Made by a program: the position numbers and the translations under genes. Positions 4,398 through 25,900 of a stretch of DNA of 64,000 nt are shown here, piece by piece. Every line of letters begins with the position of its first letter. Positions within the stretch are counted from its first letter, which is position 1. Source of the stretch: Glycera tridactyla (Eukaryota); the NCBI GenBank assembly GCA_965644265.1, contig OZ286461.1:76694001-76758000 (forward strand), in the 5' to 3' direction. Under the pieces are notes generated by a model. The model did no database searches and had not been told where the DNA came from. It worked only from the letters and a program-made list of their open reading frames with translations.

Positions 4398-4564
4398 NNN
4401 NNNNNNNNNNNNNNNNNNNNNNNNNNNNNNNNNNNNNNNNNNNNNNNNNNNNNNNNNNNNNNNNNNNNNNNNNNNNNNNNNNNNNNNNNNNNNNNNNNNN
4501 NNNNNNNNNNNNNNNNNNNNNNNNNNNNNNNNNNNNNNNNNNNNNNNNNNNNNNNNNNNNNNNN
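4398..4564. other. Assembly gap (N run); further gaps at 52151-52458 and 56772-56914
   Basis: N characters in the sequence. Confidence 1.
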
Positions 4565-5199
4565 TGGCCACCACTAACAACCAAGATAATGTCTATCATG
4601 ACAGCAATGATGGACGTGACACCCCTTCTACTGACAGGAATGACTCTACTGTATAATCGGCCCAGTATGGAACGCCATTGGGGACTTTATTCACCATTTA
4701 GGGTTCTCCCTAATTCGATTTATGGAGAACCATATTTATTTAGGGAGATCCCTAAATCATTTACGGTATTCCCTAAATCGAATTATGGAGAACCCTAATT
4801 ATTCGAGTATTTAGTGATCTCCCTAATTCGAATTATGGTTCTCACTAAATCAGAATTATGGAGAACCATAAATCGATTTAGGGAAAACCATAATATGAGA
4901 AATGAGCTGGTCGAATTAGTGATTTCCCTTCTTGAATTATGGTGATCCCATATTGAATAATGGATTTTGGTATCAAACTGCAAGGATTGCCACGACATTA
5001 AGTGAGAACCATAAATCAATTATGGTATACCCTAAATCACGACTATATGCCAATATCCATATATCATTTAGGGAGTTCCATAAATGATTTATGGAACTCC
5101 ATAATTCAGTCATGTTGCAAGTCCACCAAATTTAGTGATCTCCATAAATTGATTTATGGTTTTCCATGATTCGAATTAGGGAACACCCTAAATCGAATT

Positions 5200-7030
5200 A
5201 GGGATCTCCCTAAATCGATTTATGGAGTTCCCTAAATTAGGCCAGCCCATGGTGCTGCCATCTTACTTCAAATGAGGGCATTTAGGGAGATCCCTAATTT
5301 GATTTAGTGATCTCCATAAATCGATTTATGGTATTCCCTAATTCAAATTAGGGATCACCCTAAATCGATTTATGGAGTTCCCTAAATCAGGCCATCCCAT
5401 GGTGCTGCCATCTTACTTCAAATGAGCGCATTTAGGGAGATCCATAATTCGATTTAGTGATCTCCATAAATCGTTTTATGGTATTCCATAATTCGAATTA
5501 GGGATCTCCCTAAATCGAATTAGGGATCTCCCTAAATCGATTTATGGAGTTCCCTAAATTAGGCCAGCCCATGGTGCTGCCATCTTACTTCAAATGAGGG
5601 CATTTAGGGAGATCCCTAATTTGATTTAGTGATCTCCATAAATCGCTTTATGGTATTCCCTAATTCAAATTAGGGATCACCCTAAATCGATTTATGGAGT
5701 TCCCTAAATCAGGCCATCCCATGGTGCTGCCATCTTACTTCAAATGAGCGCATTTAGGGAGATCCATAATTCGATTTAGTGATCTCCATAAATCGTTTTA
5801 TGGTATTCCATAATTCGATTTAGGGATCTCCCTAAATCGATCTATGGAGTTTCCTAAATCGGGTCATCCCATGGTGCTGCCATCTTACTTCAAATGAGCG
5901 CATTTAGGGAGATCCATAATTCGATTTAGTGATCTCCATAAATCTTTTTATGGTATTCCATAATTCGAATTAGGGATCTCCCTAAATCGATTTATGGAGT
6001 TCCCTAAATCAGGCCATCCTATGGTGCTGCCATCTTACTTCAAATGAGTGCATTTAGGGAGATCCATAATTCGATTTAGTGATCTCCATAAATCGATTTA
6101 TGGTATTCCATAATTCGAATTAGGGATCTCCCTAAATCGATTTATGGAGTTCCCTAAATCAGGCCAGCCCATGGTGCTGCCATCTTACTTCAAATGAGGG
6201 CATTTAGGGAGATCCCTAATTCGATTTAGTGATCTCCATAAATCGATTTATGGTATTCCCTAATTCAAATTAGGGATCACCCTAAATCGATTTATGGAGT
6301 TCCCTAAATCAGGCCATCCCATGGTGCTGCCATCTTACTTCAAATGAGCGCATTTAGGGAGATCCATAATTCGATTCAGTGATCTCCATAAATCGTTTTA
6401 TGGTATTCCATAATTCGAATTAGGGATCTCCCTAAATCGATCTATGGAGTTTCCTAAATCGGGTCATCCCATGGTGCTGCCATCTTACTTCAAATGAGCG
6501 CATTTAGGGAGATCCATAATTCGATTTAGTGATCTCCATAAATTTTTTTTATGGTATTCCATGTTTCAAATTAGGGATCTCCCTAAATCGATTTATGGAG
6601 TTCCCTAAATCAGGCCATCCCATGGTGCTGCCATCTTACTTCAAATGAGTGCATTCATGGAGATCCATAAATCGATTTAGTGATCTCCATAAATCGATTT
6701 ATGGTATTCCATAATTCGAATTAGGGATCTCCCTAAATCGATTTATGGAGTTCCCTAAATCGGGCCATCCCATGGTGCTGCCATCTTACTTCAAATGAGC
6801 GCATTTAGGGAGATCCATAATTCGATTTAGTGATCTCCATAAATCAATTTATGGTATTCCATAATTCGAATTAGGGATCTCCCTAAATCGATTTATGGAG
6901 TTCCCTAAATCAGGCCATCCCATGGTGCTGCTATCTTACTTCAAATGAGCGCATTTAGGGAGATCCATAATTCGATTTAGTGATCTCCATAAATCGATTC
7001 ATGGTATTCCATAATTCGAATTAGGGATCT
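5200..7030 (+). repeat. 150-bp tandem satellite (~12 units) inside the foldback element
   Basis: Marker GGTGCTGC(C/T)ATCTTACTTC recurs at 5251, 5401, 5573, 5723, 5873, 6023, 6173, 6323, 6473, 6624, 6774 and 6924. Units are built from ~21-22-bp quasi-palindromic subrepeats (TAGGGATCTCCCTAAATCGATT). Inverted units at ~7035-7130 and ~7975-8340. Confidence 0.95.
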
Positions 7031-7133
7031 CCCTAAATGCCTTCATTTGAAGTAGGATGGCAGCACCATGGGCTGGCCTGATTCAGGGAACTCCATGAAT
7101 TGATTCAGGGAGATCCCTAATTCGATTTAGGGT

Positions 7134-7134
<1 letters not shown>

Positions 7135-7183
<49 letters not shown>

Positions 7184-7452
7184 GTCATTCTCTCTTTCTC
7201 CTCCCCCTCTCTCTCTCCCCCGTCTCCGTCTCCGTCTCTGTCTCCCGCGTCTGCTCTCGCTCCTGCTCTCGCTCCCTCCCCCTTCCATTTCTCCCTCCCC
7301 TCTCTCTGACTCTCTTTCTCTCCCTCCCCATCTCCCGCTCCCATTCCCGTTCCCGCTTCATGACGTCACAATTGATCACATACTGATTGTGACGACCCAG
7401 AGCTTCCTTCATTATGACGTCATAACAGCAATCCCCGACTTCGTTTTCTCCC

Positions 7453-7519
<67 letters not shown>

Positions 7520-7790
7520 ACCTCACTCTCTTTCTCCTCCCCCTCTCTCTCTCCCCCGTCTCCGTCTACGTCTCCGTATCCCGCTCTTGCTCCAGCTCCT
7601 GCTCTGGCTCCCTCCCCTTCCCTCTCTCCCTCCTCCCCCTCTCTCTCACACTCTCTCTCCCTCTCCGTCTCCCGCTCCCGCTTCATGACGTCACAATTGG
7701 TTGTACCCTTGGTATCACACACTGATTGTGACGAGAATGAGCTTCCTTCATTATGACGTCATAAGAGCGACCCCCGACTTTGTTTTCCTA
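7135..7790. repeat. Duplicated (CT)n-rich cassette at the centre of the foldback element
   Basis: Two (CT)n runs (~7136, ~7455), each followed by a related pyrimidine-rich tract and CTTCATGACGTCACAATTG...CTTCCTTCATTATGACGTCATAA (at ~7356 and ~7681). Confidence 0.9.
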
Positions 7791-10472
7791 GATCAAGCCA
7801 GTGGTGCTGCCATCTTACATCAAATGAAGGCATTTAGGGAGATCCCTAATTCGATTAAGTGATCTCCATAAATCGATTTATGGTTTCCATAATTCGAATT
7901 AGGGATCACCCTAAATTGATTTAGGGATCTCCCTAAATCGATTTATGGAGATCACTAAATCGAATTAGGGATCTTCCTAAATGCCTTCATTTGAAGTAAG
8001 ATGGCAGCACCATGGGTTGGCCTGATTTAGGGAACTCCATAAATCGATTTAGGGAGATCCCTAAATAGAATTATGGAAAACCATAAATCAATTTATGGAG
8101 ATCACTAAATCGAATTAGGGATCTCCCTGAATGCCTTTGTTTGAAGTGAGATGGCACCACCATAGGCTGGCATGATTTAGGGAACACCATAAATCGAATT
8201 AAGGAGATCACTAAATCGATTTAAGGATCTCCCTAAATGTCTTCATTTGAAGTAAGATGGCAGCACTATGGACTGGCCTGATTTAGGGAACTCCATAAAT
8301 CGATTTAGGGAGATCCCTAAATCGATTTAGGGTGATCCCTAATTTGAATTATGGAGAACCATATTTCATTCAGGAAAAACCATAAATGATTTATGGTTCT
8401 CCCTATATCTTCGAATTAGGGATCTCCATTAATAATTTATGGAGAACCTTAAATAGATTTAGTGATCTCCATAATTATTTAGGGTTTACCCTAATTCATT
8501 TATGGAACACCCTAAATGATTTATGGATCTCCCTAAATAAATATGGTTCTCCATAAATCGAATTAGGGAGAACCCTAAATGTTGAATAAAGTCCCCAATG
8601 GCGTTCCATAGCCCAGGGCTGTACAATGGATACGGGAATTGACACATTGAGTGTCTGTGAATCCCCTGTTGGGGACCTTGGAAGAGGGATAACCCGTGTC
8701 AATCGCATAGGCCTCTCAGTATAGATCAGATGGTACTGAAAGAACGTAAAACAATCAAGCAACCAAGTGACTAACAGTCTTCACTGAGTTGTTATCTCCC
8801 ATCATGAATCGAAGCAATACTCACCGACAACAATCACCACTGGCTAAGATGTTGGAGTTGCCGTGAGATGAATCATGAGAAAAGGTACATATGAAACAGT
8901 CAGGGTGTTAGACCAGCCCAATGTGTTTATTGATGGATCTATGCTGTCACTTCGTTGCCACAAAGATCCATTCTTGGAAAGAAGATGGCGATTACCAAAC
9001 AGAGAAACTCCGATATTTTCGATGTAATAGAACCAATCGCATAATGATTATGTCATTGGTGATGATGATCGTATCATATTGATGGTGAGTATGTCATTGA
9101 AAATGATAGTAACTAAGATGATGGTGGTGGTGGTAATGATGGTGGTGTAGGTGATAGTGTGGTGCTGGTGATTCAAGGTCGATTCACGTCGCTTCAAATT
9201 CATATACAGTGAATTCTGTTGATGATATGGCGCCCATATGTCGCGTATTTGTGGCTGCCAGTGTCCTTGCTATCGATTCAGAAAGAACGGGTTGTCACAT
9301 GAGAACACTGGGAATAGATAAACAATTTAATTAGCAGAGAGCTGCATTTTGTGGTCATCTCTATAGCAGGACACTTTTATTGAAAGCACTGGCATCTTGT
9401 TCATATCCATTTCAAACCAGTTCTCGTGGTTCAAATGCTCGATGAAAAGGGATCCATGTTACTCTGGACATCTCCAACCGTGCCTGAATCAACATCTATG
9501 AAGGCTGCATCCTGTGAATCATCATCAATATTCGAATATCTAACAGAGCTAAACATAAATCATAAATCTGCCAGAGCTATAATATCACGAGCATGGCCAG
9601 TTTGTTGTGCAATGATGTCTTCCCCATATGGTCGTCGCATTCTAATGGCTTGTATACTTTCAATAGATCGAAATCAGATACGATTCTAGTAAAAAAATAA
9701 AATTCAGAGTTCTCAACCATTCTGTGTTCAGGATTTGTGAGAGCGATAAACCTGACATCCATATATCTGACATTCATAGATCAGGAACCCATGACCAACA
9801 CATCCTTTTGGTTGACACATGCTTTCAAGCTTCAATTGATCGATCAATCAATCTGTCGATTAATCATTCAATCAGACAGTCAGTCAGTGAGCCAGCTGAT
9901 TAGTCAGTTTGTCAGTCAGTCAGTTATCCAGTCAGTTGATCTGTTAGCCTTTCAGTCAATCAATTAGCCAGTCTGTCAGTCTGTCAGTCTGTCTGTCTGT
10001 CTGTCAGTCCAATCAATCAATAGATCAATCAAGCTCACCATTTGCACGACCATTTGAATGCCAAACAGGACGAGGCAAGGACATCTCTTTCACCTCATGC
10101 TGGTAAGGTTCGAAATGAAGTTGTTTACATGTGACCGGTCACCGGTCACCAGTCGCATCAGTCACTAGATGGCACTGTGTCAATTGGTGACATCTAGTGT
10201 TTCCATAGTGATGCATTCTCCTGTGATGTCACAATGAGAGATGAGAGCCCATTCTCTCATCCCAGTCGAAATATTTGATTTAGGCTCAGGTTATCCAGAG
10301 TTTCGGCTTTATTCAGTCACCAAATAGCAATTTACAATTTCTGAGAAATTCCCCCCGACTTGGTTCAAAGATTGACGATCCAAAAAGTTTTCCACTTCTT
10401 TGTGTGGCCAAATACAACTAGAATTCATTTCGGAATTGATTCATCTCGATGTTAGTTTATATTTGACATTAA

Positions 10473-12279: not shown

Positions 12280-12575
12280 TTAAGTATGTTTGTATACTTT
12301 TTTACCCCAGGCTTAGAAAATTGAATTATTCTAAAGTTCAGTGTCTGTTTCAAAATAACCTTCAGCTGTGGAGTTTCTGTGTATTTGAAATGAAAAGCCC
12401 CTTCCCCCAGTGTTGGCTGAATAGTGTCACTCTGTAAACATTCACCCAGGGGCCGGTGTATGTACCAGTCCACTGGGTCGAGGGATCCTTCGTGTTGGTG
12501 GTCACATACGTGTAAATGTCCTCAGTTAGAGTCAATCAAGTGACCTATTGGAGTATTTATTATCAATCTTCAGTG

Positions 12576-13942
12576 ATCTCATTTCTGTCCTGGTAGAATC
12601 TCCACTTCATACTATTCTTATAGAGTGATATTCTATCCTTGGTATTTAGTTCATTAGGCAGCATGTTTCTATGGATCTAATTGAATATGATCTCTAGTCC
12701 AAAGGTGATGTCATGGCTGCTGGTTGGATGAACATAGATGGAATGAAGGACTTGTGAGAGCTCCCTAAGAAGTAGCGAAAGAATATCATGCTATGTTCGA
12801 AGTAGTATAGTATGATATTTCTCTATTCGAGTTCGTCAAAAACAGTGTACATCAACACGTATGTACAATTACCCCAAGACCAAGGGGGCTTTTTCGGATT
12901 GACAAATACAGTAGTGATACTCAGCTAGCTCACTCTATGAGTATGAATATGATTATGATCATGATTATGAGATGAAAAGAGCAAGGTATGAATGAATGAG
13001 AGATGAGGATGCACCATGACACATGTGTTCCACTAAATCTAAGAAGGATAACTTCAACATATGAGTGGATAATATTGGCATGTCTTCATTGACATATCAC
13101 ATACAGTTTCTGGTGCTGGAAATGAACAATGGTTGGGAACCGATAATAAATGACGCACATAAATGACGAATTGGATATGATCCACATCGAGTATATCAAG
13201 TAGTCAATACTTCTCTTGCAAATCCTTTCAATACGTCGAAGTATTGAGTGGACAATGCGAAACATAAGTCTGGTGCGATGTAAGGGATGATCAAAATATA
13301 TGCCGAGACGGAGTCGAGGATTGATCAAACAAGAGAAAGAGAAGGAACATGCTCACTGAGCAGTCAACTGACAGTCAATCATCATACCGACGCTAAGATG
13401 TTATCAGCATGACTAGGAAAGATAGCGGGACTATTGGAGAACTACCCGAACGCCCGAACGACCCTTCAATGCTAGCGATTTCCATAAAATTACTCCTCAC
13501 GTTATGGCCTCAGAAAGAAATATCTCAAATTGCTGATCAGTCGAGGACCGCCGCACAATCCCTGATTCAGATCATGGCGCAACTACGATGAAGCACCAAC
13601 AGTGGGTGATTGATATGGACAGTGCATGAAAACAGCTTCATAGTCACTAATGAGAAACAAATGGATGGTAGGTTACGCACCATCTGGATCATCCAAGATC
13701 AATTCTGTGTATGCTTGTATTTGGATGGAGTGACAGGAGAGGGCATGTCTGGTAAGTGATGCGGTACTCACAGGAGATAAACCTGGGGTGTGTACACTGA
13801 TCTACATAAATGAAACTATAATGTAATATACACAGAAACAAGGTTCTCAGGATAATATGAGCGGATGTTCTACAGGAGTCTGGTCAACTTTTTGTGTTGG
13901 TACCAGGGCTCCATCCTTTCTATAGGCCTTGTTTGGTGACTC
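12576..13942 (+). repeat. 1367-bp direct repeat, copy 1 (abuts the LINE 5' end)
   Basis: Identical to 21985-23351 (offset 9409) except 4 transitions, by manual comparison: 12828/22237, 12904/22313, 13305/22714, 13516/22925. Confidence 0.97.
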
Positions 13943-14056
13943 TTTTTTTCCATACAAGGACATGCCGAGAGAGTAAGACGTACGTTTCGAGGGAGAGCAA
14001 AGTCGTTATTTCCTAGACATTGATGCCAGTGCGATAGTTAACCACGACACGAAAAT

Positions 14057-16675
14057 ATGAGTAAGAAGTCAAAGACTACGCTGAAGAAGGATGAATCTCC
14101 AGGTATTTTGGATTCAAGTAATATTAGACATTATTTCACACCGCTGGGAGCGGAACACAGTGTGAGCGATAAAGCAGCTAACGAAGCCCTTTCACCTGCT
14201 GTATTTTCATTACCTGGGGGTGATCTACCCCCGGCCGGGTTCGAACCTAGCACTTCACGGTCGACTGGACCGCAGTCTAGAGTAGAATCAGGTGTGCTCG
14301 CAGTCTCCTTGTCCGGGGATTTAGCGTCTCCGTCCATGCGTTCAGTCTCATCTCCTACCTCACCAGGCCCATTTGTCACCGCAGACTTGGCACAGGGTAC
14401 CGACACCACTCTCCCCACATCGAGTGGGGAGGAACATACACCACTTTACATTAGTACTGGTGTTGAAAATGATGATGAAACTGCGTTCTCCACATCGAGT
14501 GGAGATACCCCTTCATCAAGCAGAATCACCATTACCTCCACCATACTAGACACAATTGGCACCCCGAAGCTCGAGTCAAATAGCATTGATATTGCTGGTG
14601 AAACCTCCTCATCGTCTATAATCATTTGCTCCACCATGTCCTCCACATCGAGTGGAGAACCACCATGTTCAAATTTAACGGCCTGTGATGACCCAGACCA
14701 GAACCAACACACTCCTATCGACATGCAAGCTAACGATGCTGAATGTAGTTCGCGCACAATGAGTGGTAATCAACTGACGGATGTATCACTGAACTTCCTC
14801 CAAAAGTCTAGCATTGACGACCAGCGGGAGAATATACCAAATGAAAGTATGGTGATAATCAAAACACCTAAAAAGAAACAGGCTCCCCCCACAGCAGTAA
14901 AGAACAAAATTTTCGATTTCTTCAAAAACATTAATTTCATTCCCTCGGCGGATGATGATAGATTGGAACCTAACGATATTATCAATTCTGTCTCGAAAGT
15001 GAAACCTGTAAAGTATCGCTTTCCAGTAGATAATCTTTCAGTATCACCAGGAGTGAAGCGTAGGAACAAGAGCTCTTCACCTGATGCTAATGATGTCAAA
15101 GAAGATATAAAACGCCTGAAAGATGCAGGTGCCTCACCACCGATGGAAAATGAAACCATATTTTCAGCGAGTGCAACAGAGATGGACTATGAACCATCTA
15201 ATCCGAATCTACTTACCAGTCCCCCCAATCCAGCACTTATAAATCGTTCACTGACTTCACTTCTGGGGTCGGAAGTTAATCTTGACACTAATCCAGGTGA
15301 GAGTCCTTCGAATATGGATACCTTGAAGGACCTTAAGCAACTACTTCGGGATGAATTATGGACTGATCTGCGCAAAGAGCTTATGTCTGACCTGAAGTCT
15401 GAAATTTCAAATATGCACAAAGACCTAACCAGTCAGTTAAGTCGAGCACTTGACAAAAAAAGTAAAGGGCTTGAGAATGAACTGAAGGACTATATCAAAG
15501 GTGAGATCACGTCAGAAAGGATGTCGGTGTTGAAAGTAAGTGAAAAAGAAGTTATGTCAGCCACCATGTCTGAAGTGTCCAAAGAATTGGTTTCGGTTGA
15601 ATTGAAGGTCAAGAACCTTCAAAGGGATGTGAAATCTCTTTTTGCGAAGGTCAATAATGATGTGATAGTGCAGCATGTTAATGAAAATATACCTGACATA
15701 GTCATCCCACCTAAAACGGACAACTTGATCCGCTCAAATGATCTTGAAAAAGTTCATGCTCGATTAGAACAACTTGAGCTATCGGATCGCCTTAGTTGTA
15801 TTATTATAGAAGGTGTTGATATTGATCCGCAATATTCTCTGACAGAGAATATAACATTTTGCCTGAATACCAATCTTGATGTGTGTTTGTATGACTCAGA
15901 TATAGTGAAATGTACCTACCTAGGCAAATCAAAACGTGATCCCAGGCAAATCCTTGTAAGATTCAAAGACGTTGAAAACAAAAGGAAAATTCTGAAGCAA
16001 AAAAGTAAATTAAAGGGTGGTCGTATCTTTATCAAGGAGTTTCTCACTGCTAAGAATAATAATCTATTTTATCGAGCAAGAGAGTCCAAAAGGAGTAAGA
16101 ACTATAACAGGGTTTGGTCCTATGATGGCCTCATCTGGGGGGCCAAAAACTTTGACAGTCAACCAGAATTGATAAATGATGACAATCCTCCTACAGTGCC
16201 CACTGACATGAATAAAAAGAGACCAACTACCACTGAAAATCCACCGGTCTTCTCGGTCAATCCCAGGAATAATGGCACAAATCGAGCTCATAATTATAAT
16301 AATCCGCACCAAGTTTACCAGATGAATCAACCCCAGCCCCCACCCCCTCCTATACCGTTTCCACCTGTATGGCATCAACCACCACCAGGTTTTCCCTCGA
16401 AAACTCTACCAAGGTTCAATCATTTCCATGTTCCGCCGCCAGACTATCACCCGCTCGCATTTGTTGAGTCAGACAATTACAGGGAGAATTTTCCTGATAT
16501 AAATGGCCGACTACGCCCATCTGCCCCAGCCTTTAATCCTATTTGCCCGCCAGGGGCAGCCCAACCACCACATGAATCGAACTTCCCTCTTGCGCAACAC
16601 AATGGTAATACATTCCACCGTCCAGTGATACAACCGCTACGTGCAAATCAGCAACAACAACGCTTGTGGCGATAG
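14057..16675 (+). CDS. LINE ORF1 protein (872 aa): S/T-rich N-terminus, coiled coil, L1-type RRM + CTD, P/Q/N-rich tail
   Basis: Heptad-like region from ~aa 420 (TLKDLKQLLRDELWTDLRKELMSDLK...), then LEQLELSDRLSCIIIEGV...PRQILVRFKD..KRKIL..K.KLKG..IFIKEFLT..NNNLF..AR..K....VWSYDGLIW, which follows the L1-like RRM/CTD pattern of LINE ORF1 proteins. Confidence 0.85.
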   Translation: MSKKSKTTLKKDESPGILDSSNIRHYFTPLGAEHSVSDKAANEALSPAVFSLPGGDLPPAGFEPSTSRSTGPQSRVESGVLAVSLSGDLASPSMRSVSSPTSPGPFVTADLAQGTDTTLPTSSGEEHTPLYISTGVENDDETAFSTSSGDTPSSSRITITSTILDTIGTPKLESNSIDIAGETSSSSIIICSTMSSTSSGEPPCSNLTACDDPDQNQHTPIDMQANDAECSSRTMSGNQLTDVSLNFLQKSSIDDQRENIPNESMVIIKTPKKKQAPPTAVKNKIFDFFKNINFIPSADDDRLEPNDIINSVSKVKPVKYRFPVDNLSVSPGVKRRNKSSSPDANDVKEDIKRLKDAGASPPMENETIFSASATEMDYEPSNPNLLTSPPNPALINRSLTSLLGSEVNLDTNPGESPSNMDTLKDLKQLLRDELWTDLRKELMSDLKSEISNMHKDLTSQLSRALDKKSKGLENELKDYIKGEITSERMSVLKVSEKEVMSATMSEVSKELVSVELKVKNLQRDVKSLFAKVNNDVIVQHVNENIPDIVIPPKTDNLIRSNDLEKVHARLEQLELSDRLSCIIIEGVDIDPQYSLTENITFCLNTNLDVCLYDSDIVKCTYLGKSKRDPRQILVRFKDVENKRKILKQKSKLKGGRIFIKEFLTAKNNNLFYRARESKRSKNYNRVWSYDGLIWGAKNFDSQPELINDDNPPTVPTDMNKKRPTTTENPPVFSVNPRNNGTNRAHNYNNPHQVYQMNQPQPPPPPIPFPPVWHQPPPGFPSKTLPRFNHFHVPPPDYHPLAFVESDNYRENFPDINGRLRPSAPAFNPICPPGAAQPPHESNFPLAQHNGNTFHRPVIQPLRANQQQQRLWR

Positions 16676-17256
16676 TTGATTCATCTCATAGTCTTTAATC
16701 ATGGCTTATGTTCCTATCTACCGAAGACATTATGACCGTGTTCAACCCCCGAAACTTGTAAGCATTATATTTTTCTTCTTCTAGATATACTGTCTATAAC
16801 ATTTTTTTACTTTGCAACCACCGCCCGCGGCAGAAGTGACATAGCCATATAGTTGCACTCTATATTTAGTCATGACTCGGTCACTGACCCTGTGTGTGAA
16901 CCAGGTGTCGAAGAGCTCAGGTGTGTGAACTACACGCTGGTTATGTCTAGCGACGTAAATCAGAACTAGAAGTTCATCTACTTGCCGCTGTACAGAAACT
17001 GGGAGTGTGAGCCAAATCTCATTGCTGAATTACCTCGTGCTGATTTGTCTTAACCTAGCGGCCCATGAGTGCACCACAGTCGTGGGCTTTTTCCGCCAGT
17101 GCAATGCTAAATTACGACGATATTACCTGCGGTGGTGCTGAGAACTAATGTTGTCTATTCATACCGCCAGGTAAAACTGAGCATTCTCAACCAACTTGGT
17201 GATTTCAAAAGTGATCCGTATATATCCTATCTAGTTCTGCTCTCTTTGTATTGTAG

Positions 17257-18096
17257 AAATGTACCCCTCAGGACACGAACCAGGCCAAACAGAGGTTGAA
17301 CTACGTAGGCCCAGACAAATTGTTCAACGCTAAAAACATCTATCGTAGACATGGCCCACCGAAAATTCTATTACTTGGGGACTCTCATGTCATCCATGCG
17401 TCCTGTGCCATAGAGGACGTCCCTGAAGAGAATGAAATATCTCGCTTCATGACAGATACCATGTACCATGGGGTCAGTTGCTCCAAAATCTGGCGCCTTA
17501 TGGATAATCTCAAAGGAACTGGCATGAGTGACGAAAAATGTGCCAAGTATGGGAACCAATGGCAACGAGTGATTGATGGATCCTGGCGTCCAGAGTACAT
17601 CATTTTACTAATCGGGTGTAATGATGCGGACGACCTCAACTCTCGTCAAAACGTCCTATATCCAAATTTGGACAGTAAGTGTGCAGCTAAAATGGCCAAT
17701 GAGGAAGTTGACATATGGATCAACGAGTTATACCCTTGTATGTATGACTTAGTTAGTGAGATTCATGATGCATTCCCAGATGTGCCAATAGGGCACATCC
17801 CAGCATTCCCAAGAAGCTGGTGGGAAAATCCAACCAGAAGGCTCCTAAATTGTATAAATTTCAGATTTTATGGCCATCTGAAAAAGGAGTTCAAGGTTCG
17901 TCAGCTTACTACTCGCAGCCTGTATTACGACACTGGAAAACTTCCTGTTGGGTCAGGATATGCAGATGACATTATCCCAGGCTTTATGGACATAGATAAT
18001 GTACACCTCAACACCATGGGCTACGAGGTGATGTTGCGGGATGTCATCCCGAAGGTGATGGCTGCGTGTGAAACCAAGCCTAAATCAAAGAAATAG
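17257..18096 (+). CDS. SGNH/GDSL-family esterase ORF (279 codons open from 17257; no AUG before the catalytic Ser)
   Basis: Block I LLLGDSH (Ser 17383-17385), block II Gly (YHGVS), block III IGCND (17611-17625), block V DNVH (17995-18006). First in-frame ATG is at 17449, downstream of GDS. The frame opens immediately after ...ctctttgtattgtag (17256). Confidence 0.88.
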   Translation, partial: KCTPQDTNQAKQRLNYVGPDKLFNAKNIYRRHGPPKILLLGDSHVIHASCAIEDVPEENEISRFMTDTMYHGVSCSKIWRLMDNLKGTGMSDEKCAKYGNQWQRVIDGSWRPEYIILLIGCNDADDLNSRQNVLYPNLDSKCAAKMANEEVDIWINELYPCMYDLVSEIHDAFPDVPIGHIPAFPRSWWENPTRRLLNCINFRFYGHLKKEFKVRQLTTRSLYYDTGKLPVGSGYADDIIPGFMDIDNVHLNTMGYEVMLRDVIPKVMAACETKPKSKK

Positions 18097-18581
18097 TTAT
18101 CTCATGTTGTCACCTGAGGGCCACTGGGATCCCATTCCCTCCCATTAGTACCCCCTCCCGACAACTCCATTACCCCTCTCTAGATACTCTCTGTATCTCG
18201 ACAAGTAATTATGAAAACTAACTGGTATACCTTAAATAAAAGATTAAATCAGATGTTTTGTTGTCTACCTATATACTTATTAGACATTTACATCCTGGGA
18301 TCACCCTGTTGATGGTATTATATGTGGCGAAATGAAGTGTGTGTTTTTGCTGTGTGCTGAGAGACAAGTAGATTCATCCTCGAGGATATGGTAACCACGA
18401 TGGTCGGTGATCTGTGAATGCCCACTGACCATCCATCTGCCAATATCCAAGGTCAGAACTGCTTTTATATCTATATTTCCAACTGATAATAAAATCTGCC
18501 ATGGTTGTTTATGAACATATATGCAATGCTCTCCCGAAATTCCATTAATTGTCTGCCAACATCTGAAATCTATAATCAAGA

Positions 18582-21548
18582 ATGCCAAGACCACGTAAGT
18601 ACAAATATATCTTTCCACTGAGCCATGAGACCAGTGTCAGCAGTTACTGTTCGATGGCGCTATCTAATCTGCCTGGCATTGCTACGGGTGCTCTAAACAT
18701 CCGTAGCATTATCAGGAAGCACGATGACGTCTCTTCCATCTTAAAAATAAGTGACTTGGATATAATGTGTTTGACAGAATCGTTCCTGAATGATAGTATT
18801 ACCGATGCGGAAATGTACATACCATCCTATAAGTTTTTCCGTCAGGATCGTACTATTAACTGTCATAAAAATGGGGGTGGTGGGATTATTGTGTATGTCA
18901 AGAGTCATCTGAATACCAAATTGAATGTTGAATTATGTCATTGCTCTCCTGATTTGGAAGTCCTGAGTTTCAGTTTGTTTTTGGAACAGACTAGGCCAAC
19001 GCACTATCTAACCATATACCGACCGCCAGATGGCAATCTCAAAAAGGCTTTAGACGTTCTTGAAGATATCCTTTCTCGACCTGTCTTTGTGTCATTGAAT
19101 GATACAATATTCGTGGGTGATGTGAACATTGACCTTCTAAATCCACGTAATCATAAGACTATCATGTATAACAAATTCTGTGAAGCTGTAGGGTTTTACC
19201 ATCTGATCACAGAGGCAACTCGCATCTCGTTAAATAGTAAAAGCTGCATTGATCATATTTTGGTCAATCGTCCTGAATATTACGCAAGTTATGGAATCTT
19301 AGACCCAGGGTTGAGTGACCATTGTCTTATCTATACCTCTAGACATAGATTCAAGAGCAAGAAACCAAAAGAAATGATAGAAATTCGTTCTCGTCGGAAG
19401 TTTGATCATAATACATTCAACAACAGTCTAATAAATCACAATTGGAGTAGGATCTACGATGCACCGAATACTGATGAGGCGTCAGAATCCTTCTCAAATG
19501 ATTTCGTAGAAATTCTAAATAAACACGCCCCCCTGAAACGTGTTCCATGCAGATCTGACCATCAACCCTGGGTCAACCATGAGTACCTGAGTATGATTGA
19601 TTACGTTGAATATAGATCGAAAATCTATAATAAAACGCCCACAAATCTTAATCTGGAAATGAAAAAAGAGGCCCTACGTAGCAAAAATCGCCTGAAAAAA
19701 TCACTAAAAAGATCTTTTATTTGTGACAGTCTGAACGACACAAAAGGAGACAGTAGAAAATTGTGGAAGCAATCAAAGCGCATCTGGCCGCTCACATCAA
19801 AGGAATCTGTGGTCCCAACATTAGGTGCTGATCAGTTTTCTGTGAACAATACGGATTATGTAAACCATGTAAATGAATATTTTTCAAATGTTGGTGCCAC
19901 CCTTGCTGAACGTTTTGAGAACCAAAATGACCCTATAATTGATGGAAATGATACAGATGTTAATATAATTGATAATGTGGATAGTTTTTGCCTAAAAGAA
20001 GTCGATGTTGGGAATGTCGAAAGTGCCATCTCTAGATTGAGCAATACCTCTGCCTATGGATCGGACGGAATCAGCAGTTTTTATGTGAAACAAGCTATCT
20101 CGTCTATCAGTTCGCTACTAGTCTATATATTCAATAAATCAATCAATGAAGCAACTTTTCCAAAAATCTGGAAGCATGCAACTATCAGTGTTCTACACAA
20201 AGGGGGGCTAACAAATGATCTCGGAAATTTTAGGCCAATATCATTGCTTTGTATCCTGGGGAAAGTTTTAGAACGCTTGATACATGATCAAACTACTGCT
20301 TTTCTGGAGAAATTTGGTGTCCTAAGTACTGCTCAATTCGGGTTCAGGAAGGGATACTCCACAGGCTCTTGTCTGGCCTCATTACTTGATGACATCTACT
20401 GCTCAGCAGACGCAGGCCTAGTGAGTGGAGTTCTCTTCCTGGACCTGAAAAAAGCGTTTGATACAGTAAACCACTCCATCCTACTAGCTCGTCTTGTTAG
20501 GAACAATTTCGGAGGCACCACCGTTAGATGGTTCAGTTCTTACCTGAGAGGAAGATCACAATCAACTCGAATCGGTCTGACTACATCGAGTCCTTTACCA
20601 ATCGAACACGGTGTCCCCCAAGGGTCCATCCTTGGACCATTACTGTTCATTGTCTATGTAAATGATATATTCAACTATGTGAACCACTGTCGGCCGCTAC
20701 TATATGCAGATGACACGGCACTGCTTGTGTCAGGGCCGAATAGTATGATTGTTGAAGAAAAATTAAATAATGATTTGGTCGGAATATCGAAGTGGTTTAA
20801 AGACCTGAAATTGACAGTCAACATCGTAAAATCAAAGACTATGTTATTCGGGACTAACAAGCGCTTGCTATTGAATGATGGTTTGAATGTCAAACTAGAT
20901 GATATCAGAATTGATCAGGTATCTAAATACAAGTATCTCGGAGTTCAGTTAGATCCATCCCTCAGCTTTGAGGCACATGTCAAATATATTGTTAATAAGG
21001 TACACTTTAGACGATGGGCATTAACTTATTCGAGACCGTCGATCACTAAAGACACGGCCCTTTATTTATTTAACAGTCTTATACAGCCTCTATATTATTA
21101 TGCTGACTACATCTATGGCGCTTGCTCAAAGAGAACGAGTAAACGACTCCAAATATCTCAGAATCGCTGTTTAAGTGTGATAAATGAGTCAGGCTGGAAC
21201 TATTCGGCCTCTGAACTACATGAGATACTGAAAGTGGACAACCTGGAGGTGACAAGGAAACAACACCTATTGTCTGAGGTATATAAGGCAGTGAAGGGTA
21301 CACAACACGGCCCGTTATCATATCTTTTCAGAAAGAAGGACAACCATGGAAAGCACCATGATACTAGACATAGTCGATCCCAGAACAATAATCTTACTGT
21401 CCCGAAGAATAAACTCCAATTTGCAGATAATAGCCTTCGATATCGGGGCCCAGTACTCTGGAATAAACTTGACCATGAGACGAAGAATTGTGAAAGCCTA
21501 TCATCATTTAAGGCAAAATTAAAATCCTGCCCATCGTTAGCTGGATAA
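18582..21548 (+). CDS. LINE ORF2 (988 aa): AP endonuclease + reverse transcriptase
   Basis: APE motifs LNIRS, CLTES, YRPP, GDVNIDL, IDHILV, SDHCLI. RT motifs FRPISLL, QFGFRKG, FLDLKKAFDTVNH, GVPQGSILGPLLF, YADDT, YKYLG. C-terminal S..YRG..LWN.L as in CR1/L2/Crack-type elements. Confidence 0.97.
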   Translation: MPRPRKYKYIFPLSHETSVSSYCSMALSNLPGIATGALNIRSIIRKHDDVSSILKISDLDIMCLTESFLNDSITDAEMYIPSYKFFRQDRTINCHKNGGGGIIVYVKSHLNTKLNVELCHCSPDLEVLSFSLFLEQTRPTHYLTIYRPPDGNLKKALDVLEDILSRPVFVSLNDTIFVGDVNIDLLNPRNHKTIMYNKFCEAVGFYHLITEATRISLNSKSCIDHILVNRPEYYASYGILDPGLSDHCLIYTSRHRFKSKKPKEMIEIRSRRKFDHNTFNNSLINHNWSRIYDAPNTDEASESFSNDFVEILNKHAPLKRVPCRSDHQPWVNHEYLSMIDYVEYRSKIYNKTPTNLNLEMKKEALRSKNRLKKSLKRSFICDSLNDTKGDSRKLWKQSKRIWPLTSKESVVPTLGADQFSVNNTDYVNHVNEYFSNVGATLAERFENQNDPIIDGNDTDVNIIDNVDSFCLKEVDVGNVESAISRLSNTSAYGSDGISSFYVKQAISSISSLLVYIFNKSINEATFPKIWKHATISVLHKGGLTNDLGNFRPISLLCILGKVLERLIHDQTTAFLEKFGVLSTAQFGFRKGYSTGSCLASLLDDIYCSADAGLVSGVLFLDLKKAFDTVNHSILLARLVRNNFGGTTVRWFSSYLRGRSQSTRIGLTTSSPLPIEHGVPQGSILGPLLFIVYVNDIFNYVNHCRPLLYADDTALLVSGPNSMIVEEKLNNDLVGISKWFKDLKLTVNIVKSKTMLFGTNKRLLLNDGLNVKLDDIRIDQVSKYKYLGVQLDPSLSFEAHVKYIVNKVHFRRWALTYSRPSITKDTALYLFNSLIQPLYYYADYIYGACSKRTSKRLQISQNRCLSVINESGWNYSASELHEILKVDNLEVTRKQHLLSEVYKAVKGTQHGPLSYLFRKKDNHGKHHDTRHSRSQNNNLTVPKNKLQFADNSLRYRGPVLWNKLDHETKNCESLSSFKAKLKSCPSLAG

Positions 21549-21891
21549 GTACACCGAGTACTTAAGCCCGGCTCTTGAATATGCTAATATAGGATAGTTA
21601 TGTTATGGTATTACTGTCATTGTCTAGTAAGCTGATGTGAACACTTTTGCCAGTACCTTTATGATATTTGATACTGTATAAGAAGAAATTGAATGTACGC
21701 GGTGAGGAATACGTAACTAAAAATAATGGGTATGTATAATTGGAATGAGGGTGTATAAAAGGTGTGCTGAGAGGTGGAAACTGATTGCAATTTTAGTTGT
21801 TGTTACTTTGAGAATGAAATGTGACCCAGTGTACAGTATGACGGAGATCTTCCGATTGCATCTATAACCAGTTTGCATAAGTTTGTGATAC

Positions 21892-21905
21892 GACCCTTCG
21901 GGGTC
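21892..21905 (+). promoter_or_regulatory. 3'-UTR stem-loop GACCC-TTCG-GGGTC of the LINE (candidate RT recognition element)
   Basis: 5-bp stem closed by C-G with a UUCG loop, ~55 nt upstream of the tail. L2-clade LINEs are known to use 3' stem-loops. Function here is inferred. Confidence 0.5.
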
Positions 21906-21984
21906 CTGAGTTATCTGTTATGTTATGTTATATATAATATGTTTACTTATGCAATAAACAATTCTTATTCTTATTCTTATTCTT

Positions 21985-23351
21985 ATCTCATTTCTGTCCT
22001 GGTAGAATCTCCACTTCATACTATTCTTATAGAGTGATATTCTATCCTTGGTATTTAGTTCATTAGGCAGCATGTTTCTATGGATCTAATTGAATATGAT
22101 CTCTAGTCCAAAGGTGATGTCATGGCTGCTGGTTGGATGAACATAGATGGAATGAAGGACTTGTGAGAGCTCCCTAAGAAGTAGCGAAAGAATATCATGC
22201 TATGTTCGAAGTAGTATAGTATGATATTTCTCTATTTGAGTTCGTCAAAAACAGTGTACATCAACACGTATGTACAATTACCCCAAGACCAAGGGGGCTT
22301 TTTCGGATTGACGAATACAGTAGTGATACTCAGCTAGCTCACTCTATGAGTATGAATATGATTATGATCATGATTATGAGATGAAAAGAGCAAGGTATGA
22401 ATGAATGAGAGATGAGGATGCACCATGACACATGTGTTCCACTAAATCTAAGAAGGATAACTTCAACATATGAGTGGATAATATTGGCATGTCTTCATTG
22501 ACATATCACATACAGTTTCTGGTGCTGGAAATGAACAATGGTTGGGAACCGATAATAAATGACGCACATAAATGACGAATTGGATATGATCCACATCGAG
22601 TATATCAAGTAGTCAATACTTCTCTTGCAAATCCTTTCAATACGTCGAAGTATTGAGTGGACAATGCGAAACATAAGTCTGGTGCGATGTAAGGGATGAT
22701 CAAAATATATGCCAAGACGGAGTCGAGGATTGATCAAACAAGAGAAAGAGAAGGAACATGCTCACTGAGCAGTCAACTGACAGTCAATCATCATACCGAC
22801 GCTAAGATGTTATCAGCATGACTAGGAAAGATAGCGGGACTATTGGAGAACTACCCGAACGCCCGAACGACCCTTCAATGCTAGCGATTTCCATAAAATT
22901 ACTCCTCACGTTATGGCCTCAGAAGGAAATATCTCAAATTGCTGATCAGTCGAGGACCGCCGCACAATCCCTGATTCAGATCATGGCGCAACTACGATGA
23001 AGCACCAACAGTGGGTGATTGATATGGACAGTGCATGAAAACAGCTTCATAGTCACTAATGAGAAACAAATGGATGGTAGGTTACGCACCATCTGGATCA
23101 TCCAAGATCAATTCTGTGTATGCTTGTATTTGGATGGAGTGACAGGAGAGGGCATGTCTGGTAAGTGATGCGGTACTCACAGGAGATAAACCTGGGGTGT
23201 GTACACTGATCTACATAAATGAAACTATAATGTAATATACACAGAAACAAGGTTCTCAGGATAATATGAGCGGATGTTCTACAGGAGTCTGGTCAACTTT
23301 TTGTGTTGGTACCAGGGCTCCATCCTTTCTATAGGCCTTGTTTGGTGACTC
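21985..23351 (+). repeat. 1367-bp direct repeat, copy 2 (starts right after the LINE tail)
   Basis: Matches 12576-13942; see copy 1. Confidence 0.97.
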
Positions 23352-23410
23352 AGCGGTAGCGTACTTGGCCGGTGTGCAATGGGTCTGGGTTTCAATCCCC
23401 AGTCCTACCA
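23339..23410 (+). pseudogene. Degenerate tRNA-derived sequence (tRNA pseudogene or SINE head)
   Basis: A-box-like TGACTCAGCGGTAG (23346) and B-box-like GGTTTCAATCC (23388) at tRNA-like spacing, CTGGG/CCCAG T-stem, ends in CCA. Acceptor stem does not pair. Confidence 0.5.
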
Positions 23411-24089
23411 TGCAGGTATGTTTCACCCTTCATCTTCGATCCTCCTTGACAGGTGGTCTGATTTAGCCTACTGAAGTGCAGAAAGTGGACCTCAAACCTC
23501 ACCATTTCCATTTCCAACCTTTCTATAGATGCATCAGCGTGAGCAGGATTCATTCTTTCACAACATATCATCCTCGTCATTCAAGAAATGGGATGTGATA
23601 TAAACTCGAGATGTGACTGTTGAAATGCTTGTTGGAGTGGGCACCCTATGTCAGTTAGAATTTTGTTGATCGTCATGTGTGATGATTACTACTGAACAGG
23701 TTGCCTCACGTATGACGGGCGCCATGCGACAGAAACTCAACAGGCTAGATACAAGACAACTGGTGAGAGAATTATTTTCAGATGTCACGAGCTGTCATCC
23801 TCAGGAGCTAATTTACTTTCACATACTGGAAAACACATTGAGAAAGTAACATTATATTTTCCAAGCCAAATCTACTACTGGCTCAATGTCCATACATATA
23901 GATTGTGATCTGACTTGTCCGTCACTCAATATTTACGGATTACGCATATAATTTTCTGCTGTGATGACGTGTCGATCATACAGGTCTAAAACCCATTGCA
24001 TGATGACCTTCTGTATGTGGCGTTGATATTTTCCATTTTGATAATGGCTTCGCATTAGGTTAGAAATCTTGACACACGTTTAAAAGGTT

Positions 24090-25900
24090 GAGAGGCGGTG
24101 TTGAATATATAAATGCCTTCCATGAACCAGTGACTCATACGTGTCAGCACATTCCCCCACGCTTGCTTGGCACGTCACACAAGCATTCGCTGAGACTCAG
24201 CTCCATATACTCGTTTTCACATCTGATAAGACAGAAGAATATAATCAGCTCTTTCCGATGGCCGAGTCAAACACTGCATTGAATGCATCCAATGTTACCT
24301 CTCCAGGGCAGGGTGGCGTTCATTATCAAACGCTGAAACACCTCCCAGTCTGCTCTTTGCAGCTGATGCTCAATATCATTAACCAGATATGGGAGCCTGG
24401 GCTCTTATTTTGGCACCATTTCGGAGCAGGTGGATCAATTTAAGTTCATTTAAGTACAACGCTATGAATTTCACCCATAAACAGTCAATGAGTAGTTGTA
24501 TGAATGGAAGCACTGTACTAATACTCTACAAATCCCTGATTATGCCCATACTGGATTACGGAGACATTGCCTATGGATGCACAGGTGTCGATAATCAGCT
24601 GCGACTCCAAAGAATCCAGAACGCAGTTTGTCAGGTTGTCTTGAGTGCTGAACCAATGACGTCAGTTGCTGACATGCACCGGACCTCTAAACTAAATTTA
24701 TTGTTTGCATGCAGGGATGACCATGTGTCCACTTCTGTTTATCAATGTATCAGGGATCTCAACCCGCCTCCTCTTAACAGCTTTTTTGAAACCAGAGTCG
24801 ATGATGAGTGACCAATGTCAAGGAGTCAATCGACAGGTGTCTTAATGATGCCATGCTCAATCCTTATCATAGGGGCCAAGAACATTGGTGTTGGGGGGGG
24901 GGGGCAGAATATAAAATGACATTCCATCCACAGCCTGCCAGTCTTCAAAAAACGTCTGCAGGATATAAGGCAGTCATTTTTTGTTTTTGGCAACAATTTG
25001 TGTGTGTTGTATATGCCTGATTGGTAATTATAATGTCATATCTGTCAATGTGTCACTCCTGGCGTTCGGTGAATGTGGTCCAACCCACTTCCTTGACCAA
25101 TTTGCATCGATTGACAAATCGTGCCGAAAGATCTTGGTATATAATTTATGGCTTTGCATGCCTTACAAACCTCAGAATGTTTGATGCAGGTCCTATTCAA
25201 GCTTCAGGTATCTGTCTCCGGGCCTTTCAGACATCACCTACTGGAAGCCTCAATGTGGAAGCCAATGAACCCTCACTTCATTTACGAAGAATAAAGTTAG
25301 GTCTCCAGTATTGTCTGACATTGAAGGTTACCCCCATCGAACCTAACACATGAGTGTCTTCCCGCCAGAATATACAAAAATATTTCAAGAACTTCCCAAC
25401 GTCATAGCTCCCCTTGAAATAAGGTTCGAGAATTATTTCGGAAGTTACGACTTAAATACACTCCCAATATCACAGATGGACCCTGCCCAGATTGCAGACT
25501 AGGACAAAATTCACTTGAATTTGGCCCAGTCCACAGAAGAGACCACAAAAGTCAGCTGATTGGTCAGTGCTTTCAGGCAAACTGAGGGTCTTACTGGTGG
25601 CTTCTAAATACATATCAAGGTCATAAAAGCAAGAGTATTCATTTTACCCAGATTCTCTGTCATCTCTGAAGGTCTTGCTGGGAAATCTCAAGAACAGTAT
25701 ACCTTTGCAAATTTTGGAAGAGTATCAAAGATCATCAGGAGACTGTCAGACTTTGCTGGATTCCAAGCCATATTGGTATTTCCGAAAATGAGGTAGCTGA
25801 TAAAGCAGCCAAATCTGCTCTAGGTTTGCCAATCACCGAAATGGAAATCCACTATTCAGACTTCAAACCAAGAATTAAGCTCTTTATTGACTAACTGTGA
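24090..25900 (+). mobile_element. Decayed I/Nimb-type LINE with RNase H
   Basis: Fragments TEEYNQLF...SPGQGGVHYQTLKHLP..LQLMLNIINQIWE (~24230-24395), GICLRAFQTSPTGSLNVEANEPSLHLRRIKLGLQY (~25205-25315) and RNase H CWIPSHIGISENEVADKAAKSAL (~25754-25822). Many stops and frameshifts. Confidence 0.8.
24440..24830 (+). mobile_element. CR1/L2-type RT C-terminal fragment nested in the Nimb remnant
   Basis: LYKSLIMPILDYGDIAYG...RLQRIQNAVCQVVL...MHRTSKLNLL parallels the C-terminus of the intact ORF2 (LFNSLIQPLYYYADYIYG...RLQISQN). Confidence 0.65.

What the first reader, a model, noticed from the sequence alone, without database searches (positions are those of the whole stretch)
12576..23351. 1367-bp direct duplication flanking the LINE exactly like a giant target-site duplication
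Seen: copy 1 (12576-13942) ends at the LINE's first base and copy 2 (21985-23351) begins right after the (ATTCTT)4 tail. The copies have equal length, 4 mismatches, and no gap at either junction. Established: target-primed reverse transcription normally gives TSDs of a few to tens of bp, and CR1/L2 elements often have none. Inference: second-strand cleavage ~1.4 kb from the first nick, or repair-associated duplication. A simple haplotype mis-merge would not by itself explain a copy flush against the 5' end. The direct repeats would also let the LINE be excised cleanly by recombination.
Basis: partly seen in the sequence, partly recalled or inferred. Interest (0 to 1): 0.8.

Follow-up and report, generated by a model that had tools for sequence, protein, structure and literature searches.

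The report
LINE insertion flanked by 1.4-kb duplication
A full-length, apparently young LINE retrotransposon in an animal genome sits between two near-identical 1367-bp copies of ordinary host DNA, which is most likely a rare but already documented "very long target-site duplication", provided the assembly is correct.

Summary
Bases 12576-13942 and 21985-23351 are an ungapped 1367-bp direct repeat with 4 mismatches, all transitions. The repeat abuts an 8042-bp LINE (13943-21984) that has an APE endonuclease/RT ORF2 and an (ATTCTT)4 tail.

New evidence shows the repeat is host DNA and not part of the element. A small tRNA-derived SINE (23335-23517) has its own 11-bp target-site duplication. It straddles the right end of copy 2. 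Copy 1 holds only that SINE's first 17 bases before the LINE begins. The locus before the event was therefore left flank + 1367 bp + right flank, and the present structure is exactly a target-site duplication.

This is not new in kind. Kilobase target-site duplications are published for human L1 (median 1495 bp in repair-deficient cells; 1-10 kb tandem duplications in cancers). One is also published for an L2-clade fish LINE: one 1228-bp duplication among 25 insertions in wild-type cells.

Three things could not be tested here. The first is whether both copies lie on one DNA molecule, as opposed to an assembly or haplotype-switch artefact. The second is whether 13943 is the family's true 5' end. 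The third is whether long duplications are a family trait. No other copy of the family was found in any accessible collection.

Verdict: a probable natural germline example of a known rare outcome, of moderate to low interest.

The parts
12576..13942 (.). Copy 1 of the 1367-bp duplicated host segment (U2). It is contiguous with the left flank.
   Evidence: ungapped, 4 mismatches to copy 2; identity is lost immediately to the left of 12576
13915..13942 (+). In copy 1: the SINE's 5' TSD (13915-13925) plus the first 17 bases of the SINE (13926-13942). The LINE then interrupts it.
   Evidence: coordinates are the copy-2 positions minus 9409
13943..21984 (+). 8042-bp non-LTR retrotransposon (LINE), the only copy in the window
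13943..14056 (+). Putative 5' UTR (114 bp), starting with a run of seven T. The native 5' end of the family is not independently known.
14057..16675 (+). ORF1, 872 aa. It is intact and has no Pfam or PDB match. The N-terminal half is Ser/Pro-rich, followed by a charged, heptad-like stretch and a basic C-terminal part.
17257..18096 (+). Open frame of 279 codons with a GDS(H) motif and a weak SGNH/GDSL esterase match. There is no ATG upstream of the motif. The 580 bp between ORF1 and this frame contain only short frames.
   Evidence: a distant relative (L006) has a GDSL-like ORF directly upstream of its ORF2
18582..21548 (+). ORF2, 988 aa, intact: APE-type endonuclease plus reverse transcriptase
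   Evidence: RVT_1 E=2.8e-35; Exo_endo_phos E=1.3e-10; best relatives 37-40% identity
21953..21984 (+). AATAAA (21953-21958) followed by the (ATTCTT)4 microsatellite tail (21961-21984)
21985..23351 (.). Copy 2 of the duplicated host segment. It is contiguous with the right flank.
23324..23528 (+). tRNA-derived SINE (23335-23517), with a tRNA-like head at 23332-23409 and a (CCATTT)2.5 tail at 23502-23516. It is flanked by its own 11-bp TSD CCTTTCTATAG (23324-23334 and 23518-23528). The copy-2 boundary (23351|23352) lies 17 bp inside it.

Best explanation
One retrotransposition event of a full-length or near-full-length CR1/L2-type LINE created the whole structure.

Proposed steps:
1. First-strand nicking and target-primed reverse transcription began on the bottom strand at 12575|12576. 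The microsatellite tail therefore abuts the start of the segment.
2. The top-strand break used to finish integration lay about 1.37 kb downstream, 17 bp inside a resident SINE.
3. Fill-in or displacement synthesis across the staggered region duplicated 1365-1367 bp of host DNA on both sides of the insert. This is a very long target-site duplication, which amounts to a LINE-bridged local tandem duplication.

Shown: the anatomy, the host origin of the repeat, and the pre-event order left flank - segment - right flank.

Inferred: that a single event made it, and how the distant second break arose. The published options are a pre-existing or unrelated nick used in place of a nearby element-made cut, or break-induced/replicative synthesis from the reciprocal end.

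The 0.29% divergence and the intact ORF1 and ORF2 indicate a recent event.
For: - The repeat is exact in register and flush with the tail on one side and with the start of the insert on the other.
- The insert is a bona fide LINE with intact ORFs. Its ORF1 start lies 114 bp from the junction, so it is not grossly 5'-truncated.
- The repeat is host DNA. A SINE with a tRNA-like head and its own 11-bp TSD spans the copy-2/right-flank boundary and is truncated by the LINE in copy 1. The 11-mer is expected 0.01 times per window by chance.
- No other copy of the repeat or the LINE exists in the 64 kb.
- All four differences are transitions and two are at CpG. That is what real base substitutions look like, not read errors.
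- There is precedent. ZfL2-2 (L2 clade) gave one 1228-bp TSD among 25 insertions in wild-type DT40 cells (PMC2666801). L1 TSDs over 100 bp occur in under 10% of HeLa events. In NER-deficient cells they reach 5.3 kb, with a median of 1495 bp (PMC5223499). Tandem duplications of 1-10 kb with L1 at the junction are 'regarded as large TSDs' (bioRxiv 10.1101/2024.12.14.628481).
Against: - There is no read-level evidence that both copies exist on one molecule.
- The native 5' end of the family is unknown, so 'flush with the 5' end' is not independently verified.
- The similarity of the target to the tail repeat at the first-nick site is weak (10 of 18 bases, background p about 0.06).
- The window has three N runs, so the assembly is not gap-free. 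None is near the locus.
- The tRNA-like call needs a relaxed ARAGORN threshold at which shuffled windows give about 5.5 hits, and Rfam finds no tRNA. The SINE argument therefore rests mainly on its 11-bp TSD plus the A and B boxes.
Confidence: 0.6

Rival explanations
1. Assembly artefact. The locus is heterozygous for LINE insertion(s) and the assembler stitched haplotypes together so that the 1367-bp segment appears twice. The version that reproduces both flush junctions needs two things: one haplotype carrying the LINE at the right end of the segment and the other carrying an independent copy at its left end, plus a haplotype switch inside the LINE. The four mismatches would then be allelic SNPs.
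For: - The window comes from an assembly with gaps (N runs at 4398-4564, 52151-52458 and 56772-56914).
- A difference of 0.29%, all transitions, is also what allelic variation looks like.
- Nothing in the sequence can show physical linkage of the two copies.
Against: - There are no Ns at or near either junction.
- No other near-identical duplication exists in the window apart from satellites.
- With a single heterozygous insertion, one junction would have to be invented exactly at the end of the tail or exactly at the start of the insert.
- The two-insertion version needs two independent, same-orientation, full-length insertions of a family that has only one copy in this 64 kb, placed 1.4 kb apart. 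That is much rarer a priori than the few-percent frequency of long TSDs seen in assays.
Confidence: 0.22
2. The structure is real but arose in two steps. Two independent insertions of the same LINE family occurred at the two ends of the segment, on homologues or sister chromatids. Unequal homologous recombination within the LINEs then gave segment-LINE-segment, with a reciprocal deletion product.
For: It produces exactly the observed arrangement. Another, unrelated LINE fragment at 24482-24796 shows that the neighbourhood has accepted LINE insertions before.
Against: It requires two rare coincident insertions plus an unequal crossover. There is no trace of a second copy or of separate short TSDs. 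The family has only one copy in the window.
Confidence: 0.04
3. The 1367-bp sequence belongs to the element. It would be an LTR-like terminal repeat, or the true 3' end of the LINE with a 5'-truncated tandem copy lying upstream (head-to-tail LINE array made by template jumping).
For: Direct repeats of this size bracketing an RT-coding region look superficially like LTRs. Tandem non-LTR copies are known (own knowledge).
Against: - The repeat's right end falls 17 bp inside a SINE whose remainder and 3' TSD lie in the flank.
- The LINE has an AATAAA signal and a microsatellite tail just before copy 2, which marks its real 3' end.
- ORF2 has an APE endonuclease and no integrase or LTR-type genes.
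- No LINE-like coding remnants occur in the repeat.
Confidence: 0.02
4. A tandem duplication of the segment existed first. The LINE later inserted, by chance, exactly at the junction of the two copies without any target alteration.
For: None specific. It is formally compatible with the structure.
Against: It requires a hit on one particular phosphodiester bond out of about 2.7 kb, with no TSD or deletion of its own. One event explains the same data.
Confidence: 0.02

Closest known systems
Long target-site duplications of the L2-clade LINE ZfL2-2 in retrotransposition assays (PMC2666801)
   Same: The element is a microsatellite-tailed APE/RT LINE of the CR1/L2 group. One of 25 insertions in wild-type chicken DT40 cells had a 1228-bp TSD, almost the size seen here. 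The paper attributes TSDs to a second-strand break downstream of the first nick.
   Different: That was an engineered element in cultured somatic cells. Here it is a natural genomic copy of a family only distantly related at the protein level (best database relatives 37-40% identical), full length, and with about 0.3% divergence since the event.
Kilobase TSDs and local tandem duplications made by human L1 (PMC5223499; bioRxiv 10.1101/2024.12.14.628481; Gilbert 2002/2005 and Symer 2002 as cited there)
   Same: Host DNA of 0.1-6 kb is directly duplicated on both sides of a TPRT insertion. A distal nick or break-induced replication has been proposed as the mechanism.
   Different: L1 has a poly(A) tail and belongs to a different clade. 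Those events are frequent mainly in NER-deficient cells or tumours. Fixed germline examples of this size are not described in the papers read here.
CR1-like LINEs with an esterase (SGNH/GDSL) domain upstream of ORF2 (Kapitonov and Jurka 2003, recalled from memory, not read here)
   Same: ORF2 has APE plus RT. The tail is a microsatellite instead of poly(A). A GDS-motif frame with a weak GDSL match lies directly upstream of ORF2. A relative (L006) shows the same order.
   Different: The esterase match is below Pfam's cut-off (19.6 against 32.9 bits). That frame lacks an upstream ATG. An additional 872-aa ORF precedes it. Clade placement by phylogeny was not done.
LTR retrotransposons and Penelope-like pseudo-LTRs
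   Same: Kilobase direct repeats bracket an RT-coding body.
   Different: Here the repeats are host DNA that cuts through a resident SINE. The coding content is APE-RT, and the body ends in its own tail.

Membership tests
Target-site duplication generated by TPRT | Direct repeats in the same orientation, immediately abutting both ends of the insert with no intervening bases | tested here: met
   12576-13942 ends where the insert starts, and 21985-23351 starts right after (ATTCTT)4
Target-site duplication generated by TPRT | The repeated sequence is pre-existing host DNA, not part of the element | tested here: met
   A SINE (23335-23517) with its own 11-bp TSD straddles 23351|23352, and copy 1 is cut 17 bp into it. 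No LINE-like coding occurs in the repeat. Other family copies could not be obtained for the complementary test.
Target-site duplication generated by TPRT | The 3' junction lies at the element's tail, with the first-strand nick site resembling the tail or the endonuclease target | tested here: inconclusive
   The tail junction is clear. Target similarity to the tail unit is 10 of 18 bases, background p about 0.06. The endonuclease preference of this family is unknown.
Target-site duplication generated by TPRT | The 5' junction lies at the native (or a truncated) 5' end of the element | tested here: inconclusive
   The ORF1 ATG is 114 bp inside the insert, so the copy is essentially full length. 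No other copy was available to define the family's first base.
Target-site duplication generated by TPRT | An empty site exists with a single copy of the duplicated segment, and both copies are present on one molecule in the filled allele | not testable with these tools
   No reads, no second individual and no related genome are available. Scans of metagenome, prokaryote-genome and viral collections found nothing related.
CR1/L2-group non-LTR retrotransposon | ORF2 with an N-terminal APE-type endonuclease and a central reverse transcriptase | tested here: met
   Exo_endo_phos residues 38-247 (E=1.3e-10); RVT_1 residues 542-790 (E=2.8e-35)
CR1/L2-group non-LTR retrotransposon | 3' end formed by a short tandem repeat, not poly(A) | tested here: met
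   (ATTCTT)4.3 at 21961-21986, preceded by AATAAA
CR1/L2-group non-LTR retrotransposon | Esterase (SGNH) domain in the ORF upstream of ORF2 (present in a subset of the group) | tested here: inconclusive
   Lipase_GDSL_2 scores 19.4-19.6 bits, below the 32.9 cut-off. A GDSH motif is seen. There is no PDB match. BLASTP against the GDSL-like ORF of relative L006 is not significant.
CR1/L2-group non-LTR retrotransposon | RT phylogeny places it within the CR1, L2 or a neighbouring clade | not tested
   No labelled reference set was at hand. Database relatives are unnamed, or named only 'reverse transcriptase domain-containing'.
LTR-type element (the repeat as a terminal repeat) | The terminal repeats are part of the element and travel with it; the flanks show a short TSD outside the repeats | tested here: not met
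   The repeat boundary cuts a resident SINE. The bases outside the repeats share no short TSD. The coding content is APE-RT.

The most novel reading that the evidence does not exclude
The event is real, and the position of the distant second break is not random. It lies 17 bp into the tRNA-like, Pol III-promoter head of a resident SINE. In that reading, this LINE family would complete integration at pre-existing nicks or stalled-fork/R-loop sites such as Pol III units, and not by cutting the second strand itself. Kilobase TSDs would then be a recurrent family trait and a natural germline source of small tandem duplications.
Probability: 0.08. Interest if true: 0.6.

Novelty: new member of a known kind. 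Interest (0 to 1): 0.35.

Why it matters
If reads confirm it, this would be a clean natural germline example of a kilobase target-site duplication made by a CR1/L2-type LINE. It is young enough that both junctions, the tail and the duplicated DNA are almost unmutated. So far such events are documented mainly in engineered assays, repair-deficient cells and tumours. A natural case would show that LINE integration also seeds small tandem duplications in normal genome evolution. It would also leave a substrate (1.4-kb direct repeats) for precise loss of the element by recombination. It does not reveal a new mechanism or a new kind of element.

Tried and rejected
1. Search for other copies of the LINE, to fix its 5' end and see whether the repeat travels with it. 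All attempts failed:
- The exact ORF2 is not on record.
- The protein word search found nothing closer than 37-40% identity.
- A 32-mer from the 5' end gave 0 hits in metagenome contigs.
- A 28-mer from the 3' end gave 0 hits in genome contigs.
- ORF2 against viral contigs gave no relative.

2. Search for other copies of the junction-spanning SINE. An 18-mer across 23351|23352 hit four metagenome contigs. Alignment showed these are chance matches in unrelated DNA.

3. tRNA and Rfam detection of the SINE head at normal stringency was negative. It was found only at 85% of the ARAGORN threshold, whose false-positive rate I measured. The MFE fold is not better than shuffles. The SINE call therefore rests on its 11-bp TSD, the A and B boxes and the short tail.

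4. The fourth occurrence of the 11-mer (29724-29734, minus strand) sits in an unrelated repeat and is not a SINE copy.

5. PDB sequence searches with ORF1 and the esterase-like frame gave nothing significant.

6. Two distant relatives (L001, L006) were checked for long flanking repeats. None was found, but they are different families and too few to give a base rate.

7. A literature search for the accession of the nearest relative's assembly found no paper.

8. Models rejected on logic: 3' or 5' transduction, a tandem duplication made after insertion, and insertion into a pre-existing tandem duplication. Each needs extra coincidences or predicts a second tail or a second LINE that is absent.

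I did not identify the species. The costly protein searches were not spent on that.

Full report
**1. The observation**

The repeat finder seeded the pair at 12576 and 21985. A base-by-base comparison shows 1367 aligned bases without gaps and four mismatches, at 12828, 12904, 13305 and 13516. Identity collapses at the first base beyond each end. BLAST of the window against itself gives 99.7% over 1367 bp. It finds no other copy of this segment or of the sequence between the copies. This is far beyond chance. The four differences are all transitions, and two are at CpG.

**2. What lies between the copies**

Bases 13943-21984 (8042 bp) make up one non-LTR retrotransposon on the + strand.
- ORF1 runs 14057-16675 (872 aa) and has no Pfam or PDB match.
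- An open frame at 17257-18096 has a GDSH motif and a sub-threshold GDSL/SGNH esterase match. It has no ATG before the motif.
- ORF2 runs 18582-21548 (988 aa). It has an APE-type endonuclease (E=1.3e-10) and a reverse transcriptase (E=2.8e-35).
- AATAAA lies at 21953-21958, followed by (ATTCTT)4 at 21961-21984.

The nearest proteins in the large database are only 37-40% identical. A more distant relative on a long contig (L006) also has a GDSL-like ORF directly upstream of its ORF2. By architecture the element belongs with the CR1/L2 group. I did not place it by phylogeny.

ORF1 starts 114 bp inside the insert, so the copy is essentially full length. The statement that copy 1 ends at 'the LINE's first base' cannot be checked independently, because the end of the repeat is the only thing that defines that base.

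**3. Is the repeat host DNA or part of the element?**

Other copies of the family would have answered it directly, but none could be found. The exact ORF2 is not on record. There is no close protein relative. DNA scans with the 5' end and the 3' end found nothing, and neither did a protein-guided scan of viral contigs.

The window itself supplies the answer.
- Just inside the right end of copy 2 begins a small SINE at 23335-23517.
- Its head has tRNA-like A and B boxes (TGACTCAGCGG ... GGGTTTCAATCCCC). ARAGORN folds it as a cloverleaf with 6 of 7 acceptor pairs at 85% of its normal threshold (23332-23409).
- It ends in (CCATTT)2.5.
- It is bracketed by an 11-bp direct repeat, CCTTTCTATAG, at 23324-23334 and 23518-23528. 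That 11-mer is expected 0.01 times per window by chance.
- The relaxed ARAGORN setting alone is weak. It gives about 5.5 hits per shuffled window and 12 in the real one. Rfam and default ARAGORN are negative. The fold energy is unremarkable.
- The combination of head, tail and own target-site duplication is nevertheless the standard signature of a SINE insertion.

The boundary of copy 2 (23351|23352) lies 17 bases inside this SINE, and the SINE continues undisturbed into the right flank. Copy 1 contains the SINE's upstream TSD and its first 17 bases (13915-13942). The LINE follows at once.

Three conclusions follow. The segment is ordinary host DNA. Before the event the locus read left flank - segment - right flank. 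One breakpoint of the event was inside the SINE. A terminal repeat of the element, or a tandem LINE array, is not compatible with this.

**4. How the structure arose**

The tail abuts the first base of the segment. The start of the insert abuts its last base. The pre-event order is known. The structure is therefore formally a target-site duplication of 1365-1367 bp. The two-base uncertainty arises because both the tail unit and the segment begin with AT.

In TPRT terms, the bottom strand was nicked at 12575|12576 and primed cDNA synthesis on the tail. The top-strand end that primed second-strand synthesis lay about 1.37 kb downstream.

I read the relevant literature.
- For the L2-clade fish element ZfL2-2 assayed in wild-type chicken DT40 cells, 24 of 25 insertions had target alterations of 20 bp or less. 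One had a 1228-bp TSD, and 80% had TSDs overall (PMC2666801).
- For human L1, TSDs over 100 bp occur in under 10% of HeLa events.
- In NER-deficient cells L1 TSDs range from 5 bp to 5.3 kb, with a median of 1495 bp. The authors propose that a distal, unrelated nick is used (PMC5223499).
The size seen here is within the documented range, including for an element of the same broad group. Which of the two routes operated cannot be told from the sequence.

**5. Rivals**

- *(a) Assembly artefact.* With a single heterozygous insertion, one of the two junctions would have to be created by the assembler exactly at the end of the tail or at the start of the insert. There are no Ns nearby, and no other false-duplication signs in the window. 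One version reproduces everything: two alleles with independent insertions at the two ends of the segment, and a haplotype switch within the LINE. It needs two same-orientation full-length insertions 1.4 kb apart from a family that has one copy in this 64 kb. I consider that much less likely a priori than a long TSD, which occurs at the percent level in assays. It cannot be excluded without reads.
- *(b) Real unequal crossover.* The same two insertions could have been followed by a genuine unequal crossover. This is possible but needs even more coincidences.
- *(c) Prior tandem duplication.* The duplication came first and was later hit exactly at its junction. This is negligible.
- *(d) Transduction models.* These predict a second tail or a second LINE, and neither is present.

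I put about 0.6 on the single-event long TSD and about 0.2 on artefact. The rest is spread over the other rivals.

**6. Comparison with what is known, and novelty**

The structure works like, and passes the testable criteria for, a TPRT target-site duplication. The criteria that need reads or an empty allele could not be tested. It is a new example of a known, rare outcome and not a new kind of event.

Such an event would restore the empty site exactly.

One speculative extra concerns the distant break. It lies in the Pol III-promoter head of a SINE. It would be worth asking genome-wide whether second breaks of this family favour such sites. With a single case this is only an idea.

**7. Housekeeping**

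No N run was filled or looked up.

Noticed in passing
window 23324-23528: A small tRNA-derived SINE (about 183 bp). It has an A/B-box head and a (CCATTT)2.5 tail, and is flanked by an 11-bp TSD CCTTTCTATAG. It is the only copy in the window, and its family and partner LINE are unknown.
   Followed up: partly
window 24482-24796 (+), inside ORF 24389-24811: A fragment of a different, older LINE. It matches the C-terminal part of ORF2-type proteins (35% identity to P0002; 29% to residues 825-919 of this window's ORF2). It lies about 1.1 kb downstream of copy 2 in the same orientation.
   Followed up: partly
window 16676-18581: The LINE has an unusual middle region. It contains 580 bp of short broken frames, then a 279-codon GDSH-motif (esterase-like) frame with no ATG ahead of the motif, all downstream of an 872-aa ORF1. 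Either ORF1 and the esterase were once one frame and this copy is damaged there, or translation uses an unconventional start or a frameshift.
   Followed up: partly
window 2786-3472 (-): A long exon encodes the end of the ligand-binding domain and the first transmembrane part of a Cys-loop (neurotransmitter-gated) ion channel (Neur_chan_LBD E=8e-34). This shows the window is from an animal genome. The species was not identified.
   Followed up: no
window 4666-8610: A satellite block with a period of about 150 bp (10.6 copies at 5452-7038, 93% matches). Inverted, more diverged copies lie at 7784-8580. The block adjoins the N run at 4398-4564.
   Followed up: no
window 43291-45702: A 93-bp satellite with 26 copies and 89% matches. 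It is strongly C-rich on the + strand (GC skew down to -0.56).
   Followed up: no
L006 12802-~14000: In a distant relative of the LINE, ORF2 is followed by roughly 1 kb of an 8-bp microsatellite (over 120 units). This is far longer than the four-unit tail here.
   Followed up: no
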